DNA from: Podarcis erhardii
Lineage: Eukaryota
DNA: 64,000 bases
Direction: 5' to 3' (one strand)
Assembly: GCA_964252035.1 (NCBI GenBank)
Contig: OZ176200.1
Position 1 is the stretch's first letter. Every line of letters begins with the position of its first letter. Of the stretch, positions 12,782 through 59,433 are shown one piece after another. The translations under genes and the position numbers were made by a program. The notes beneath the pieces are model-generated. The model saw nothing but the letters and a program-made list of their open reading frames with translations. It was not told the origin of the DNA and searched no databases.

Positions 12782-15269
12782 TTTAAAAAGAAAAAAGAAA
12801 AAGGTAATACCTGTGTGTAAACAACAGTAACAGTGAGAGTGAAAAGATCACCTCTAGCTGAATCCTAACTGCTACTTCACGGGGCCTCTAACTGCCAGCT
12901 GCTACAAGGCACCTGTTCAAAGAATTTAGGATTCAGTATGACCTGTCAGCTTATCGAAAAACTCGAAAGGTCATTGCCAGGTTAGATTTTGGGGATTGCA
13001 GATTCTTGTAGGGTGGAATTCAACATTTCATTTTTCCAGTAGTTCTGTCTGCACAAGTATTCATCCTTGCCAGATGGGACAATCCTCCCTTCTCCCCTGA
13101 ACCCTGTTCTCCACCCAGCCGCCCAAGCCAATTTCAGAAACACAGAGGGCAGAGACGGAGGGAAATCTATGTTGCACAAGCAGGAAGTCCTTCAGCTGAC
13201 GTGGTTGGTTAGGTGAATCCCATCTGTAATTAGTATTCAGCCATTAGCAGAACTGCTACTCCAATTTTTCACTGAAAGTAACTGTGACAAAGAGGCAAAT
13301 AAAGCTTTTGAAACCAACAGGCCCCATTTCTGAGCTTTATTGCATGCCCAGTCACTATGAGTGGGTATCAGTGACGCAAGAACATTGCTTTCCCTATCGC
13401 TGCCTATTTTGTAGATTCTCTCTTTTAAGCTATGATCACACAGTGCTGTTTACATTCCCTGTGGGAGCTCCTCTTGCTTAATTTGCTGCCCTAAATGGGA
13501 AAGCTTTTATGTAAAGCTTAATTGGATGCGTGTTTTAGAAATGGTACAAGAAGAGGTTAAATGGATGTTGCAGGAAATGCAGGTAAATTGGCCTGGTTGC
13601 TGGCGGTTGTTTTATCCTGCAACATTTTTCAAAACCAGCTGTTCCGGAACCAGGAATGAGGAGCCATCCCCTTCCACAGCAGAATAAGGTAGTGTCAAGA
13701 GAATAGCATTTCATATGCAAAATGTACTTTGAACCTGTTTGAAAAAAATCCCATGCACGTGGTTTGATTTCAGATTCCTAATACTGGTGTATCTTTGCTG
13801 GTAACACTGGCCTCTTAGCACATTTCCCAGCGCTTGAAGGAAGCTCCCTTGTGGATTCTATCTCTCTCAGTCTCAGTCTCCTTCCTAGGCTGGGTACTTA
13901 GCATTGATTGCTTTGGCTTTATATGGCATTCTCAGATTCACAGCCTAATCAAGTATTCATAAATATTGGTTTTCTCCATGAATTTTACATTTTGAATGGG
14001 ATCCAGTTTCTGCCATCTCTTAGGCAATGATATAATGAAGCCTCCATGAATTTGCAAACATGCAACGTGACAATTTAGTATCTTATAATGAAGGATATAA
14101 TGATCAAGGATTTTTGTGTTTGCGTTGGACTGATCAAATACCAACCTTCAGTTCTGTGAGCTCAAGAGAATGCATAGACTACCACCAACAAAAACTGTTC
14201 CATAAAATAACATTTATGAGAATTTAATCTCTCTTTGGGGTGGGAGGTTAAGCACAATAACGCCTTTTAATGTGAGAATTTTGGAGGTAGCTGGGGTGGG
14301 GGGAGAACCAGCTTTGTTGCTCCAGTGTGGAGTTTTCAAGTATTGATTTATTTTTTCAAAGTAAGCTGTTACAAGCTTTACCCTTGTAAAATTTATGGTG
14401 CAAGTTTTCAACATTGTAAACCACTCTGATGGGGCATAAGCAAAAACATATTTATTTATTATTTTACCTGTGGTTGTAATTAGATTAGAACAATTCAAGA
14501 GTAGCAATTTGTTGTCTGTCTGCGAAGACGTCCTAAACAATCCATTCTGTGCGTTTGATTGTGTTTGCACTAAACTGTTATTACTATGATTATGATTGGG
14601 GCTGCTTTGTGCTAGATTTTATATGGATGTGTGTCTCACTCCCAGCAGGATCCTTTAAAATTGTATACAAGAAAAATACTTCATTATTCTCTCTTCTCCC
14701 CACTAACTGGATACAAGGCAGTGCCTACTGTCAGTCGGTTGAAAAGACACAATAAGCATTCTGATTGGTACAATTAGCTTTTCTCTATTTTACACATTGC
14801 CGTCACTTGGCTACTGAATTTGAGACTGTGTAAAAACATCAGCATACATACACAGAGTTCCTGTCGGAACAACTAGTCTGCAAATAACAAATAATTACTA
14901 TGCTGTCCTTATTCTGAAAGTATGTGTAAAATCTGCATTAAGTAGTTGAAAGGTAATTTGCTTTTTAAGATGTTAGTTCAAATGACTGGAAGGAAAGACG
15001 AAGGAGTACTAAAGAGCAAGAAATGTGTGTAATGTCTCTTGACTCGTAACTGAAATATGGGTGTGTTACTCTATGCTTTATTTAGAACGCACAGATGATT
15101 GACATGAATAGCTGTATCCTTCATGTTGCCTGTGGCAGCATTACTGTGAAGAGATTAAGTAGGCCTTTAGGTAAGAATTGTAATCTAATGGAAAAAAGAA
15201 CTGGAAAATGACAGGGTGTTTTTTTTTAAAAAAGGGGGGGGGGCTCCACTATCAGTTCTCTACTCTGTA

Positions 15270-15511
15270 CAGTGGTACCTCGGGTTAAGTACTTAATTCG
15301 TTCTGGAGGTCCGTTCTTAACCTGAAACTGTTCTTAACCTGAGGCACCACTTTAGCTAATTGGGCCTCCTGCTGCCGGCGTGCCACTGGAGCACGATTTC
15401 TGTTCTCATCCTGAAGCAAAGTTCTTAACCCAAGGTAATATTTCTGAGTTAACAGAGTCTGTAATCTGAAGCGTATGTAACCTGAAGCGTGTGTAACCTG
15501 AGGTACCACTG
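15270..15511. mobile_element. Tc1/mariner-type MITE, 242 bp
   Basis: TIR cagtggtacctc(g/a)ggtta with TA dinucleotide on both sides. Same family and length as 53379-53620. Confidence 0.9.
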
Positions 15512-16279
15512 TATTAGTATAGTCAGTTCTTACTTATCATATAAAATGGTTGGAGAGCATAGTGTTCTCTGCATGATATTCTTGGATATAAAATGCAAAG
15601 TTTATTTTCCTGGAAGACTTCCTGTCTACTTAGATTGTGGGCCCTCGCTGCACTATACAGTATATTTAAAAGATTGTCAATCCCTTTTATCAGTTGTTAC
15701 TTCCTCCAAAGAATCCTGGGAATTGTAGTTTGTTAAGGGTGCGGAAAATCATTGGAAGACCTATCTTGTCCTTACATAGCTGCAATTGGTAGAGTTCCCT
15801 GGGAAGGATTTATAAACCACTTATGAGTTTTCCTCAGACTAGAATGTTGCTTCCTTGTGACCATATAGGACCAGAGCAGAGCAGCAAGTTAAAATGGACC
15901 CTGTTCCTTGTTTTGCAATTGACCAGCTTCATTGTTTTAATTACCGTACTACTTTTAACAGCCTGATTCAAAGTTCCATGTGTGCTTCCATAGTCATTAG
16001 GAAATGTTCTGTCCATTTTAATTATTGTTAGCAATCTGCAAAACCAGTCTCTAAAAGCAATATACTTTTAGAGACAGATTAAACCTAGGCATTTCTACTT
16101 GGAAGTAAATCCCATTGTGTTCAATAGTGCTTACTCCCTATGCCTGCTGCCCTTTCGAAATTGCAGAGTTCTGGATTAACATAACTAAGAATTGCAATTA
16201 CAGATAGGTAGCCGTGTTGGTCTGCCATAGTCAAAACAAAACAAATTCCTTCCAGTAGCACCTTAAAGACCAACTAAGT

Positions 16280-16330
16280 CAGTTCTTGGTATGAGCTTTC
16301 GTGTGCATGCACACTTCTTCAGATACACTG
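16280..16330 (-). ncRNA. Mirror copy of the hammerhead motif (antisense to SYT9)
   Basis: Reverse complement of 17101-17151 in the left arm. Confidence 0.7.
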
Positions 16331-17100
16331 AAACAGAAGTTTCCAGACCCTTCTGTATAGTGAGAAGGTGGGGAGGGGTATTACTCAGAAGGGTGGTGGG
16401 AATGGGTGATTGGCAGATAGCTGTGATGAGCCTGTTGACGACTCTTAACGACTGCAATAGGTCTTACAGGAAAAAGCAAGGGGTGAAAAGGTGAAAAATG
16501 TCTTTGTCATGTATAATGAGATAAGAATCCAAGGTCTTTGTTCAGACCAGGTTTCTCCATGGTTTTAAGTTTGGTGATAAGTTGTAATTCAGCAGCTTCT
16601 CTTTCCAGTCTATTTCTGAAATTCCTTTGTAGTAAAACAGCTACTTTGAGATCTTGTATAGAATGTCCTGGGAGATTGAACATAAATAAATAAATCGGAC
16701 ATAAATCGGACATCAGGAATCACAAGACAGAGAAACCAGTAGGAGAACACTTCAATCTCCCAGGACATTCTATACAAGATCTCAAAGTAGCTGTTTTACT
16801 ACAAAGGAATTTCAGAAATAGACTGGAAAGAGAAGCTGCTGAATTACAACTTATCACCAAACTTAAAACCATGGAGAAACCTGGTCTGAACAAAGACCTT
16901 GGATTCCTATCTCATTATACATGACAAAGACATTTTTCACCTTCTCACCCCTTGCTTTTTCCTGTAAGACCTATTGCAGTCGTTAAGAGTCGTCAACAGG
17001 CTCATCACAGCTATCTGCCAATCACCCATTCCCACCACCCTTCTGAGTAATACCCCTCCCCACCTTCTCACTATATAGAAGGGTCTGGAAACTTCTGTTT

Positions 17101-17151
17101 CAGTGTATCTGAAGAAGTGTGCATGCACACGAAAGCTCATACCAAGAACTG
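17101..17151 (+). ncRNA. Minimal type I hammerhead ribozyme motif in the Penelope pseudo-LTR
   Basis: Stem I CAGT-GTAT / ATAC-caaga-ACTG; core CTGAAGA (17109-17115) plus one extra A; stem II GTGTG-CATG-CACAC; GAAA; palindromic AGCT mini stem III; predicted cleavage after TC at 17138. Activity is untested. Confidence 0.72.
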
Positions 17152-17240
17152 ACTTAGTTGGTCTTTAAGGTGCTACTGGAAGGAATTTGTTTTGTTAAGA
17201 ATTGCAAATTAGTGATGGATCAGTGTCTTCTTGTTGTATA

Positions 17241-17333
17241 AACAAAATAAAAAAATTCCTTCCAGTAGCACCTTAAAGACCAACTAAGTTAGTTCTAGGT
17301 ATGAGCTTTCGTGTGCATGCACACTTCTTCAGA
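17241..17333 (-). mobile_element. 93-bp Penelope pseudo-LTR fragment inserted separately
   Basis: Nearly identical to the pLTR of the adjacent element. Perfect 13-bp TSD ttcttgttgtata (17228-17240, 17334-17346). Confidence 0.85.
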
Positions 17334-17507
17334 TTCTTGTTGTATAGTAAAGGTGCCTATAGCTGCAATCCTATAGACCCACTTGCCTGGAAGAATCTGA
17401 CAGAAGTTTATAACCTATTCAATTATTTTAAGAATCCTGCATTGTTTTGTTTTGTTGCAAGGTGAGAAGCAATAGGGTGCAATGGGATAATATCATGCAT
17501 TAATCCT

Positions 17508-18118
17508 GGCTGAGACCCTACCTGCTCGCAGACTGTCTCGCCAGAGTGGTGCATGCTCTGGTTATTTCCCACTTAGACTACTGCAATGCGCTCTATGTGG
17601 GCTACCTTTGAAGGTGACCTGGAAACTACAACTAATCCACAATGTGGCAGCTAGAATGGTGACTGGGATTGGCCACCAGAACCATATAACACCAGTCCTA
17701 AAGGATCTTCACTGGCTCCCAGTACGTTTCTGAGCACAATTCAAATTGTTGGTGCTGACATTTAAAGCCCTAAATGTCCTCAGTCCTGTATACCCATAGG
17801 AGCGTCTCCACCCTTATCACTCAGCCCGGACACTGAGGTTCAGCTCCAAGGGCCTTCTGCTGGTTCCCTCGCTACGAGAAGTGAAGTTACAGTCAGAGGG
17901 CCTTCTCGGTAGTGGCACCCTCCCTGTGGAATGCCCTCTCTTCAGATGTCATAAACAACTATCTGACTTTTAGAAGACATCTGAAAGCAACCCTGTTTAG
18001 AGAAGTTTTTAAGGATTGATGTTTTTATTATGTTTTTAGATATGTTATAAGCCTCCCAGAGTGGCTGGGAAAGCCCACCCAGATGGGCGGGGTATAAATA
18101 ATAAAATTATTATTATTC
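17508..18118 (+). mobile_element. 5'-truncated L2 LINE (ORF2 C-terminal remnant and tail)
   Basis: Reads ...VHALVISHLDYCNALYVGLPLKVTWKLQLIHNVAARMVTG...HITPVLKDLHWLPVRF, typical of L2, and ends gggcggggtataaataataaaattattattatt. Confidence 0.88.
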
Positions 18119-18820
18119 CATCACCCTTTTTAGTAGAAAAGATGCTATGTGAATAAAGAAGTCAGATCATGAATAAGTAATAAAAAGTATTCCCATTGCT
18201 GTAGTTCATGGTAACCTATCAAATTTTATATTCTAGCCCTAGTGAGGATTAAAGGCTTCTTGCCTTTTTCATGCAAAAGTGGATAGATTTCAGAGTGCCC
18301 TTTCTCTTTCAGTGGGTTGGCACAGGAAGCTCATTTTACATTTTCTGACATTTGCATCTTTTCATACTTCAAGGGGATAAAGGTCCCTTCTTACAGAAAT
18401 CTCTGCAGAGGTCTGTATCTTTTCTTTTTGTAAAGGGTACTTAATATTTCTATAGTAAATTCAATAACATTTTGAATCCAAGCAGAATGGGAGGTGAACA
18501 GCAGGTGCAGAGAAATGTCCAGCATGAATGCATTTGCTGTTTTCAAACAAGCGGCTTCCTTCTTGGCGTAAACTCAATAGCAACTCAGCAATCTGCAGAC
18601 ATCCTTTTTTGGCTCATAAAGTGGGAAACTTGAAACATGGTACTTAGCTGTACAGAAAAATATTAGTGTTTTATTCTGAGCTATAGTATTAATGCTGGAC
18701 TGTGTACTTTCTGCAGTATAGCACTCCAGGTTCGGAGAAAATTATCCAAAATAACCATAATTACACAGGTGTGTGCTGCCCATGGTCTGTTTGTCCCAGG
18801 ATCCGCTGTGAAATTATTAA

Positions 18821-18982
18821 ATAGAGCACATAATCTGCATGCAGAAAATCCCAGATTCGGTCCCAGTTTTTCCAGGGATGGCTGGAAAAGTTGTCTGGAG
18901 TTCTGCTGCCAGGGAGTGTAGGCAGTACTGAGCCAGAGGAAACAGTGGTCGACTTGATATAAGCCAGCTGCTTATATTCCTA
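18821..18982 (+). mobile_element. Old tRNA-derived SINE
   Basis: Degenerate tRNA-like head (tagagcac...tgcatgcagaaaatcccagattcg) and tail ...gatataagccagctgcttatattcct. A similar tail fragment lies at about 1350-1408. Confidence 0.55.
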
Positions 18983-19724
18983 TTATTTGGGGCAAAGAAT
19001 GGAGGGTATGTGGATTGGTGGACTTTAACGGCATGTTCCAGGAAATAGGAGGCAGTGTAAGGTAAGGTTAAAAAAAGCTGAGAATGCCTTTGAAAATTTA
19101 CTTCCTGGCCATGAGAAATGTTACTTGCTTCTCATCTGGCTTCTTCCACTAGGTATTGCCGATGTGTTAGTTTTCTGTATCCGTGAAGCAAGGTAAGCGG
19201 AATTTTGTGCTATATATCCAATTCCACATGTGTTGCAATCCCACAGATGCACTTGCTGTTGGCTATACAGTACTTCTCTTCCCCCTCACCCCCATTACAA
19301 CTAGCTTGCTGCAGTGCAATGTGGAAAGTTTATGAGGGCTGCTTCCCAAATGACTTGCTGCTCTTATCCATGCCTTTCCCATGCGGTTCACTGTTTACTT
19401 AGAGTTTGCTTATGTGTGTGTGAAAATTGTCCCGTTCATAGTTAATGTAGGTAGGCCAGAATTGTGTGGGATTGCTGTCTTGCTAAAGGGAAAGGGGCTC
19501 TTTTTCAAGGCAATAAAAGAAACACCAAGTTGATCCTTTATCAGGGGGTTATTTGCTATGCAAGAATAGAAAGCAAAGCATTAAAGAGACGAGACCTCAT
19601 CGCCCTTTGAGTTGCTGGAAAAGCTCCTCCAGAACAGCAAAACAGTCTCTCACTCTGTCTGTCTGTAGCTGGCACTGGGATCTCCCGTTAAGCAAGAGCA
19701 TTACTGGGCTTTATCCTATTTTTA

Positions 19725-57881: not shown

Positions 57882-58787
57882 AGTGTAGGTTGGGAAAAGA
57901 CAGTGTGGCTGTGAGAGTTAGAGAGAACAAAGAAGATATGGGATGAGGGAGATGTTAAATTATATATTTAAAAGAATTAGGATAGTTTAAGATAGCCATG
58001 CTAAGTCGGGAAACTGGAACTATTCAGATTCTGTATATAAAGACTGCTTGTTCTGCATGTTATGTTCCTTAATTCACATCTGGGTGGATTCTCAGATAAA
58101 TATGTTTCACCCCATGCATTTGGTGTATGTGTAACTTGAGGTAACATAAGCCAGTAGGTGATAGCAGCAGGTATTTTGAGAGAGATCTGGACTCAGTAGA
58201 GCAGCTGTGGAACTGACTTTAGTGACCATTTGGAGGCAGACCCTGGTGAGGGACTGCCGGGAGTGTCACACTCCCCAACTCCTCCTTTAATGGAGTGCTT
58301 AAAAATATTGGAGATTCGGACCAGTTAAGAGAGGTGATAGCCTAAGAACTTGTACACATCATAGGCTGTACTCTGGATCTGCTCATTGGTGAGATTTCCA
58401 AGGCTTTATGACCTGGAAAATCAGTTAACATTGGGCAAGTCTTCTTTCTCCTCCTTTGCCTCAGTTTGTGTGTGCTTTTTGCCTCATGTGATGGGGAACC
58501 TTCCTGGTAGGCTGGAGGTATGATATCTTAAATGGTGCCTCCAGGCTAGGGATACACCAGAACCCAGTATAGATCTAGGTGCAGTAGCAAGGGAGAGGTG
58601 TACACTAGCACACACATAACATTCCTTTCTGGCTTCACCCAACAGAAGCTGCTTTGGTGGGTCCACACTGCCAACATGTTCCTTAGAATTAGTGAAAATG
58701 TTGAGAGTATGAACAGTAAATGGGACTTTAAAAATGTCATTATGCCTTTACATGGGGCTTGCAGTTGTCTCCGCCTGCTCTAATTTA

Positions 58788-59017
58788 TAACAAAACAAAT
58801 TCCTTCCAGTAGCACCTTAAAGACCAATTAAGTCAGTTCTTGGTATGAGCTTTCGTGTGCATGCACACTTCTTCAGATAACAGATAACTTCTTCAGATAA
58901 GTGTGCATGCACACGAAAGCTCATACCAAGAACTGACTTAGTTGGTCTTTAAGGTGCTACTGGAAGGAATTTGTTTTGTTTTGACTATGGCAGACCAACA
59001 CGGCTACCTATCTGTAA
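58788..59017. mobile_element. 230-bp inverted mini Penelope element (pLTR only)
   Basis: Arms 58789-58869 and 58900-58980 (80/81 complementary), same family as 16198. Perfect 13-bp TSD ctgctctaattta (58775-58787, 59018-59030). Confidence 0.9.
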
Positions 59018-59433
59018 CTGCTCTAATTTAGATACAAGAAGTAAACTTCCATTCCCTGAAGACCAAAATACACATGCCGCTAAATAGGTATATGCCTCTC
59101 ACGTGAAGGTTTTTTAAAAAAACAACAACAACTATAAATTGCATCAGCTAAGGGAGGTTGATAATTAATGGGATCAGAACAAACAGGGGTGTGGGTGTGT
59201 TTATTTAACTCTTTCCTCCCCTGCTATGGAGTGAGGAATTTTCTGTGCAAATTTCCTCTTCATGCTTGCTCAGATCCCATTAGCATTAAGTGCAAAAGGA
59301 TACATTTAAAGTCATGTCAACTTTAGTCCTTAGATGTGTTTCCAAATGCTCACCCTTGCTCAGAGAGGGTTTGAATTACACGGTTCCTGGATGTGAAATT
59401 TTAAGAAATAAATATTATTGAACCTTTTCACAG

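What the first reader, a model, noticed from the sequence alone, without database searches (positions are those of the whole stretch)
16198..17207. Near-perfect 962-bp palindrome (446-bp arms, 70-nt spacer) made by one Penelope insertion
Seen: 16235-16680 and 16751-17196 are reverse complements without indels. I found only two substitutions, visible as RPFC/RPFY and GVKR/GVRR in the mirrored ORFs. A single 11-12 bp direct repeat flanks the whole unit, so it looks like one recent event. Inference: in SYT9 pre-mRNA it should fold into about 450 bp of dsRNA (an ADAR or Dicer substrate), and in DNA it is a potential cruciform or fragile site. It may be polymorphic.
Basis: partly seen in the sequence, partly recalled or inferred. 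Interest (0 to 1): 0.7.

Follow-up and report, generated by a model that had tools for sequence, protein, structure and literature searches.

The report
Penelope retroelement head-to-head insertion palindrome
The near-perfect 1-kb palindrome is real, but it is the standard product of one Penelope-like retrotransposon integration, in which two truncated copies are laid down head-to-head; it is lineage-specific, and any effect on the host synaptotagmin gene is untested.

Summary
Arms 16235-16680 and 16751-17196 are 446-nt reverse complements with no indels and a 70-nt spacer. A 12-bp target-site duplication (TAAGAATTGCAA) flanks the unit. There are three mismatches, not two.

Each arm is the 3' end of a Penelope-like element (PLE), with 3' ends outward and truncated 5' ends meeting in the middle. 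The real coding remnant (76 aa) matches the C-termini of reverse transcriptase + GIY-YIG proteins.

Each arm carries PLE sequence that the other lacks, so neither is a copy of the other:
- the left arm has a 37-nt 3' "tail";
- the right arm has about 55 nt more ORF.

The two outer ends fall on the same two discrete termini used by three other PLE ends in the window. This matches published PLE anatomy and the in-vitro finding that an Anolis PLE protein nicks and extends both target strands from two adjacent start sites.

Whole-genome contigs of two related taxa, with flanks about 0.8-1.0% diverged, show an exact empty site. The insertion is therefore lineage-specific.

dsRNA, ADAR/Dicer and cruciform effects remain untested, because the RNA run laid had no reads on the unique flanks. 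The scan has noted similar PLE palindromes elsewhere in this genome. Ordinary; low interest.

The parts
16186..16197 (.). Left copy of the 12-bp target-site duplication TAAGAATTGCAA
   Evidence: single copy in the empty-site contigs of organisms B and C
16198..16234 (-). 37-nt PLE 3' 'tail', present only on the left copy (ends ...CTATCTGTAA in element orientation)
   Evidence: identical to the tail on the right arm of the second pair (58981-59017); the optional one-sided 30-40 bp tail is described in PMC8557442, PMC3846280 and PMC11167929
16235..16680 (-). Left arm: 5'-truncated 3' part of a Penelope-like element, sense on the - strand
16510..16680 (-). Mirror coding remnant (C-terminal 57 codons of the GIY-YIG endonuclease region); stop codon at 16507-16509
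16681..16695 (.). About 15 nt of A/T-rich (TAAA)n-like filler at the head-to-head joint. The boundary is uncertain by a few nt because it resembles the native AATAAA just upstream.
   Evidence: loose-end consensus of other family copies before 16696 (table 7)
16696..16750 (+). About 55 nt of PLE ORF present only in the right copy; this makes up most of the 'spacer'
   Evidence: continuous frame; homologues align from query residue 2
16751..17196 (+). Right arm: 5'-truncated 3' part of the same PLE family, sense on the + strand. It ends at ...TTTGTTTTGTT without a tail.
16694..16924 (+). True coding remnant of the right copy (76 codons plus TGA stop): C-terminal end of the PLE RT/GIY-YIG polyprotein
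   Evidence: best E 6.5e-29; matches at the C-termini of 600-880 aa proteins; those proteins carry RVT_1 and GIY-YIG
17105..17142 (+). Minimal hammerhead-like motif: helix I GUAU/AUAC, CUGAAGA, bulged A plus GUGUG-CAUG-CACAC helix II, GAAA, palindromic AGCU. The predicted cut is after C17138. Its mirror image lies at 16289-16326 on the - strand.
   Evidence: Read and compared with the min-HHR description in PMC4209133; no Rfam hammerhead hit at E<=1
17196..17207 (.). Right copy of the target-site duplication

Best explanation
This is a single integration of a Penelope-like retroelement (PLE) into an AT-rich site in a synaptotagmin intron. The PLE endonuclease made a staggered break. Each of the two 12-nt 3' overhangs then primed reverse transcription of PLE RNA. 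The top strand started at the distal start site, giving the left copy with its 37-nt tail. The bottom strand started at the proximal start site, giving the right copy ending at ...TTTGTTTTGTT. The two cDNAs grew towards each other and stopped after 483 and about 501 nt. They were joined head-to-head through about 15 nt of A/T-rich filler, and fill-in of the overhangs produced the 12-bp TSD. The 446-bp palindrome is simply the part the two truncated copies share. Shown: the anatomy, PLE identity, one TSD, private sequence in each arm, the two discrete termini, the empty site in related taxa, and recurrence of the architecture. Inferred: the order of events and the joining step. Taken from the literature: in-vitro extension of both strands and the two RT start sites.
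For: (1) Arms, spacer and TSD. (2) PLE identity: the 76-aa remnant hits the C-termini of RVT_1 + GIY-YIG proteins. (3) Both outer ends are element 3' ends facing outward, and one TSD brackets the unit. (4) The left copy has a 37-nt tail absent from the right copy, and the right copy has about 55 nt of ORF absent from the left. Neither arm can therefore be a DNA copy of the other. (5) All five PLE 3' ends in the window stop at one of two positions 37 nt apart. Three stop at ...TTTGTTTTGTT and two at ...CTATCTGTAA. [quoted passage not shown] (6) The same architecture, with one tailed arm and a 13-bp TSD, occurs at 58788-59017. Many shorter head-to-head joints (for example 16326->17105 and 16328->17120) appear in contigs of three genomes (table 5). 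(7) Contigs of organisms B and C run 15713-16185, then 32 nt, then 17334-17537. That is exactly one TSD copy plus the 20 nt between the two insertions, i.e. an empty site, at single-copy depth (table 8). (8) Published descriptions: an inverted 5'-truncated copy next to the element, a tail at one end only, a TSD around the whole unit, and head-to-head as the commonest arrangement (PMC8557442; PMC3846280).
Against: No read or contig spanning the inner joint or a whole arm was seen; unitigs break in the repeat. The interior length therefore rests on the assembly alone. Extension of both strands has only been shown in vitro, for a different PLE family whose termini lie inside the ORF start (PMC11167929). 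How two same-sense cDNAs are joined is unknown. PMC3846280 favoured a self-priming model for head-to-head repeats.
Confidence: 0.85

Rival explanations
1. Snap-back or self-priming: one cDNA was made, its 3' end folded back on itself (or RT jumped to an antisense transcript), and the second arm was copied from the first.
For: Head-to-head PLE repeats were interpreted this way in PMC3846280. Most of the spacer is contiguous with one arm, as a fold-back loop would be.
Against: Each arm has PLE sequence the other lacks: the tail at 16198-16234 versus the ORF stretch at 16696-16750. The tail-less outer end coincides exactly with the terminus of a solo insertion and of another pair. That points to an initiation site, not a run-off end.
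Confidence: 0.07
2. Assembly artefact: a chimeric fold-back long read or a mis-join created a palindrome that does not exist in the genome.
For: PLE tandem/inverted structures are known to trouble assemblies (PMC8557442). I could not obtain a read spanning the arms.
Against: The structure is not symmetrical. The arms have different outer ends, there are 3 mismatches, and the spacer is asymmetric. The unique flanks are collinear with the empty allele of two other taxa, and the TSD is exact. Each flank abuts an outward-facing PLE 3' end, which by itself requires two inverted copies. Organism A, whose flank is identical, has its contig ending at 16188, about 10 nt short of the element boundary at 16198; this is compatible with a filled site but does not prove it.
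Confidence: 0.04
3. Two independent PLE insertions that happened to land back-to-back in opposite orientation.
For: PLEs home to their own copies (PMC11167929). A third, independent PLE fragment did insert only 31 bp away, at 17241-17333.
Against: There are no inner TSDs, and one 12-bp TSD brackets both copies. Both are absent together in B and C. The identical architecture recurs elsewhere. The arms differ by only 0.67%.
Confidence: 0.03

Closest known systems
Canonical EN+ Penelope-like element insertions (Penelope/Poseidon-type) with an inverted 5'-truncated copy and a one-sided 30-40 bp tail (Arkhipova et al. 2013, PMC3846280; Craig et al. 2021, PMC8557442)
   Same: Head-to-head inverted copies, a TSD around the whole unit, a tail on one arm only (37 nt), a hammerhead-like motif near the 3' end, a GIY-YIG C-terminal ORF remnant, and an AT-rich target.
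   Different: There is no full-length ORF or direct pLTR between the inverted parts: both copies are short 3' fragments of about 0.5 kb. The arms at 446 bp are longer than the typical inverted pLTR of about 200 bp, and longer than the roughly 90-bp mini-pairs common in this genome.
PAc, the Anolis carolinensis PLE characterised in vitro (Frangieh et al. 2024, PMC11167929)
   Same: Two discrete 3' termini separated by the tail; products consistent with nicking and extension of both target strands; preference for an AT-rich target.
   Different: In PAc the RT start sites lie 111-118 bp inside the ORF start and the hammerhead overlaps the start codon. Here the termini lie about 270-310 nt downstream of the ORF stop, with no ORF start visible, so it is a different PLE family. 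I did not compare sequences with PAc.
L1 twin priming (inversion with 5' truncation)
   Same: Both 3'-OH ends of a staggered target break prime reverse transcription, and the two cDNAs are joined in inverted orientation within one TSD.
   Different: In twin priming the second primer anneals internally, so the two segments are different, adjacent parts of one RNA and there is one poly(A) end. Here both segments are the same 3' part, each beginning at a specific PLE start site, and this is what creates a palindrome.
Intronic inverted-repeat dsRNA substrates (inverted Alu pairs for ADAR; Penelope inverted repeats giving siRNAs in Drosophila, PMC3681739)
   Same: If transcribed within the host pre-mRNA, the unit folds into a 446-bp near-perfect stem (predicted -870 kcal/mol).
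   Different: No expression, editing or small-RNA evidence exists for this locus.

Membership tests
Penelope-like element (EN+, canonical domain order) | Single ORF with a reverse transcriptase followed by a C-terminal GIY-YIG endonuclease | tested here: met
   Only the last 76 codons survive (16694-16921). They match the extreme C-termini of 600-880 aa proteins (E down to 6.5e-29) that carry RVT_1 and, in several cases, GIY-YIG just upstream of or overlapping the match. Pfam on the fragment alone found nothing.
Penelope-like element (EN+, canonical domain order) | Complex insertion architecture: an inverted 5'-truncated copy adjacent to the element, with a TSD flanking the whole unit | tested here: met
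   description in PMC8557442 and PMC3846280
Penelope-like element (EN+, canonical domain order) | Optional 30-40 bp tail at only one end of the insertion unit | tested here: met
   A 37-nt tail on the left arm only. The same tail occurs on one arm of the second pair. Tail-less ends share one exact terminus.
Penelope-like element (EN+, canonical domain order) | Hammerhead ribozyme motif in the terminal repeat | tested here: inconclusive
   The core CUGAAGA...GAAA, helices I and II and a palindromic AGCU are visible at 17105-17142 and fit the min-HHR description (PMC4209133). No Rfam hammerhead model matched at E<=1, and cleavage was not tested.
L1-type twin-priming inversion | The inverted and direct segments are different contiguous parts of one RNA; a poly(A) tail sits at one end | tested here: not met
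   Both arms are the same 446 nt of the element's 3' part, and there is no poly(A).
Fold-back duplication or fold-back assembly artefact | One arm is a complete copy of the other; symmetry extends to the ends or into flanking DNA | tested here: not met
   Each arm has private element sequence. Pairing stops at the element ends. The flanks are unrelated to each other and collinear with the empty site in other taxa.
Functional dsRNA locus (ADAR-edited or Dicer-processed intronic hairpin) | Transcription through both arms, with clustered A-to-G changes or 21-23 nt duplex small RNAs assignable to this copy | tested here: inconclusive
   RNA run X23 had depth 0 on every unique-flank bin, so all reads on the arms come from other copies. 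The A>G/T>C excess is the same in the DNA runs.

The most novel reading that the evidence does not exclude
The 'one tailed arm, one tail-less arm' pattern, seen in both pairs in this window, may not be chance. It may reflect a concerted, polar double target-primed reverse transcription by a PLE dimer in which the two target strands use different RT start sites. Natural pairs such as this one would then be in-vivo evidence for the both-strand extension so far seen only in vitro. They would also contradict the in-vitro report of no start-site difference between strands.
Probability: 0.25. Interest if true: 0.4.

Novelty: new member of a known kind. Interest (0 to 1): 0.2.

Why it matters
Its main value is as a clean worked example. 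It is a young PLE insertion with an exact empty site in sister taxa. Its two arms each keep private sequence and end on the two known termini. This supports independent priming on both target strands rather than fold-back copying. For the host, a 446-bp near-perfect intronic hairpin in a neuronal synaptotagmin gene is a plausible ADAR/Dicer substrate and a possible presence/absence marker among close relatives. Such hairpins are evidently numerous in this genome, and nothing suggests this one is special.

Tried and rejected
- **Rfam scan of 15000-19000 at E<=1.** It gave only plant and animal miRNA-precursor models far below their gathering scores (MIR774 42.8 vs 80; MIR7502 40 vs 71). These are generic hits to the hairpin centre and to the second small inverted repeat. 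There was no hammerhead hit.
- **Pfam on the 76-aa remnant.** It found nothing. The ESM Atlas gave only unnamed short clusters and one weak GIY-YIG lead. The all-against-all HMMER search was therefore needed.
I rejected them as coding. They lie opposite the element's 3' untranslated region.
- **Search for exon 1 of the host gene upstream of 16 kb.** I found no convincing N-terminal exon and only weak CpG enrichment near 2.5 kb. "Intron 1" therefore remains an inference.
- **RNA evidence.** The run offered (organism H) has no reads on the unique flanks. It also differs from the window at fixed mirrored positions (16342/17089 and 16348/17083), so its reads come from other copies and probably another species. 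Editing could not be assessed.
- **Direct read support for the inner joint.** It could not be extracted, because Logan unitigs break in the repeat and only one read-laying run was allowed.
- **Paralogue identity.** The PDB comparison places the C2A exon nearest synaptotagmin-3. This does not discriminate between SYT9 and its close paralogues.

Full report
**1. Observation**

The region reads as described. The repeat finder reports one inverted pair, 16235-16680 and 16751-17196. Each arm is 446 nt, with 70 nt between them.

A base-by-base comparison finds no indels and three mismatches: 16355/17076, 16487/16944 and 16524/16907. All three are transitions and none lies in a CpG. The third lies outside the ORFs it used as a guide.

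Complementarity stops sharply at both the inner and outer ends. The direct repeat is TAAGAATTGCAA at 16186-16197 and 17196-17207. One T at 17196 could belong to either the element or the target.

**2. What the arms are**

The "mirrored ORFs" (RPFC/RPFY, GVKR/GVRR) exist, but they are antisense to the element. The real frame is on the + strand in the right copy: 76 codons at 16694-16921, ending in a stop at 16922-16924. The left copy carries the last 57 of these codons on the - strand.

Pfam does not recognise the fragment alone, and the ESM Atlas gives only a weak GIY-YIG lead. A full HMMER search finds 342 relatives:
- The best E-value is 6.5e-29.
- The longer hits (600-880 aa) match at their extreme C-termini.
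- Those proteins carry RVT_1, and several carry GIY-YIG just upstream of or overlapping the matched stretch.

That is the domain order of canonical endonuclease-positive Penelope-like elements (PLEs). Both arms are therefore 5'-truncated 3' parts of a PLE. The right copy is sense on the + strand and the left copy is sense on the - strand. Their 3' ends face outward and their truncated 5' ends meet in the middle, i.e. head-to-head.

**3. Asymmetries that decide the mechanism**

The left copy continues 37 nt beyond the palindrome (16198-16234), ending ...CTATCTGTAA in element orientation. The right copy stops at ...TTTGTTTTGTT.

Conversely, the right copy continues about 55 nt further into the ORF (16696-16750) than the left copy. 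The remaining roughly 15 nt of the "spacer" (16681-16695) is A/T-rich (TAAA)n-like filler. Other family copies read differently upstream of 16696 (table 7).

Each arm thus holds element sequence the other lacks, so neither can be a DNA copy of the other.

The window holds three further PLE 3' ends:
- A solo 93-bp fragment at 17241-17333 (-), with its own 13-bp TSD TTCTTGTTGTATA.
- A second head-to-head pair at 58788-59017, with the 13-bp TSD CTGCTCTAATTTA (two ends).

All five ends stop at one of the same two positions, 37 nt apart. In both pairs exactly one arm carries the tail.

**4. Comparison with the literature**

- Craig et al. [quoted passage not shown] - Arkhipova et al. 2013 (PMC3846280): the unit is flanked by a TSD, an optional 31-bp tail sits on one inverted repeat, and head-to-head is the most frequent arrangement.
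- Frangieh et al. [quoted passage not shown] It initiates reverse transcription at two adjacent internal sites, and the tail is the sequence between them.

The locus fits this point by point. The geometry also fits. With the TSD retained on the top strand at the left and on the bottom strand at the right, both 12-nt 3' overhangs are placed to prime cDNA synthesis toward each other.

I therefore read the palindrome as the overlap of two independently primed, truncated cDNAs from one integration event. The joining step and the order of events are inferred.

**5. Independent DNA**

Contigs of three whole-genome runs were laid on 15400-18000.

| Organism | Result | Flank differences from the window |
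|---|---|---|
| B and C | One contig at single-copy depth covers 15713-16185, then 32 letters, then 17334-17537 | B 7/914; C 9/902 |
| A | Contig ends at 16188, about 10 nt short of the element boundary at 16198; compatible with a filled site, but not proof | 0/713 |

- The 32 letters in B and C are exactly one TSD copy (12) plus the 20 nt that separate the palindrome from the neighbouring solo insertion. This is an empty site for both insertions.
- Arm divergence of 3/446 (0.67%) is a little below flank divergence of about 0.8-1.0%. This is consistent with insertion after the split. The count is small, and gene conversion or RT errors could distort it.

Table 5 also lists many contigs joining left-arm positions 16276-16328 directly to right-arm positions 17101-17126, in all three genomes. 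These are shorter head-to-head pairs at other loci. The architecture is therefore routine for this family.

No contig spans the inner joint or a whole arm, so the interior length rests on the assembly. The inverted arrangement itself is required by the two outward-facing ends and the shared TSD.

**6. Host context and proposed consequences**

On the + strand the window encodes:
- a synaptotagmin TM exon near 26.1 kb;
- a C2A exon at about 29.4-29.9 kb (Pfam C2, 3.4e-30);
- C2B exons at 56.1-59.6 kb.

The nearest solved structure is synaptotagmin-3, so the exact paralogue was not resolved. From memory, the exon peptides resemble SYT9. I did not find exon 1, so "intron 1" is likely but inferred.

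Transcribed on the + strand, the unit is predicted to fold into an almost uninterrupted 446-bp stem (-870 kcal/mol). In Drosophila, rearranged Penelope copies with long inverted repeats are a reported source of siRNAs (PMC3681739).

For this locus nothing could be tested. The only raw RNA run available (organism H) has zero depth on all unique-flank bins. It differs from the window at fixed mirrored sites, so its reads come from other copies. The transition excess on the arms is the same in the DNA runs.

Cruciform formation or fragility is also untested. From general knowledge, a 70-nt spacer weakens hairpin or cruciform extrusion compared with spacer-less palindromes.

**7. Verdict**

However, the structure is the textbook product of PLE integration, present many times in this and related genomes. 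The scan has also noted it elsewhere in this genome (s1-238301, s1-225642, s1-220697) and at 58.8 kb in this window (s1-238327). It is a new, young, lineage-specific member of a known kind. Functional claims remain open.

Noticed in passing
window 17228-17346: An independent solo PLE 3' fragment (17241-17333, - strand, 93 bp, tail-less) has its own 13-bp TSD TTCTTGTTGTATA. It lies only 31 bp from the palindrome's right TSD and forms a second 86-nt inverted repeat with the right arm. It too is absent from organisms B and C. Two PLE hits within about 30 bp in one lineage suggest homing next to an existing copy, as proposed for PAc.
   Followed up: partly
window 58775-59030: A second head-to-head PLE pair has arms of about 90 nt, a 13-bp TSD CTGCTCTAATTTA and a tail on the right arm only. 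Its joint is complex: a 12-nt CTTCTTCAGATA segment is repeated around an 8-nt filler, next to the palindromic helix-II sequence GTGTGCATGCACAC. Identical or similar short joints recur in many contigs of three genomes. Either RT often stops or switches at that palindrome, or the mini-pair itself propagates.
   Followed up: partly
window 16194-16203 and 59012-59021: On the tailed side of both pairs, the target sequence abutting the tail is GCA(A/G) next to TTACAG. Many family contigs carry G at the position equivalent to 16197 (table 3). This could be microhomology between the target 3' end and RNA downstream of the distal start site, or a slightly longer tail.
   Followed up: no
proteins P0001 and P0005: The closest database relatives of the PLE C-terminal fragment are gene models combining an N-terminal CARD domain with a GIY-YIG fragment. 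These are probably PLE fragments exonised or mis-annotated into a CARD gene in some related genome.
   Followed up: no
window 15400-15570 and 17488-18000: Other very high-copy repeats flank the locus, with contig depths 10^5-10^7 and abundant RNA reads in organism H (table 2). A 16-nt x3 tandem lies at 15454-15501. I did not identify them.
   Followed up: no
window 16183-16356 and 17053-17313: In the RNA run of organism H, depth is about 100-165x on the terminal roughly 150 nt of the PLE (the hammerhead region) and 2-40x on the interior. This echoes the uneven PLE RNA coverage reported for Anolis (PMC11167929).
   Followed up: no
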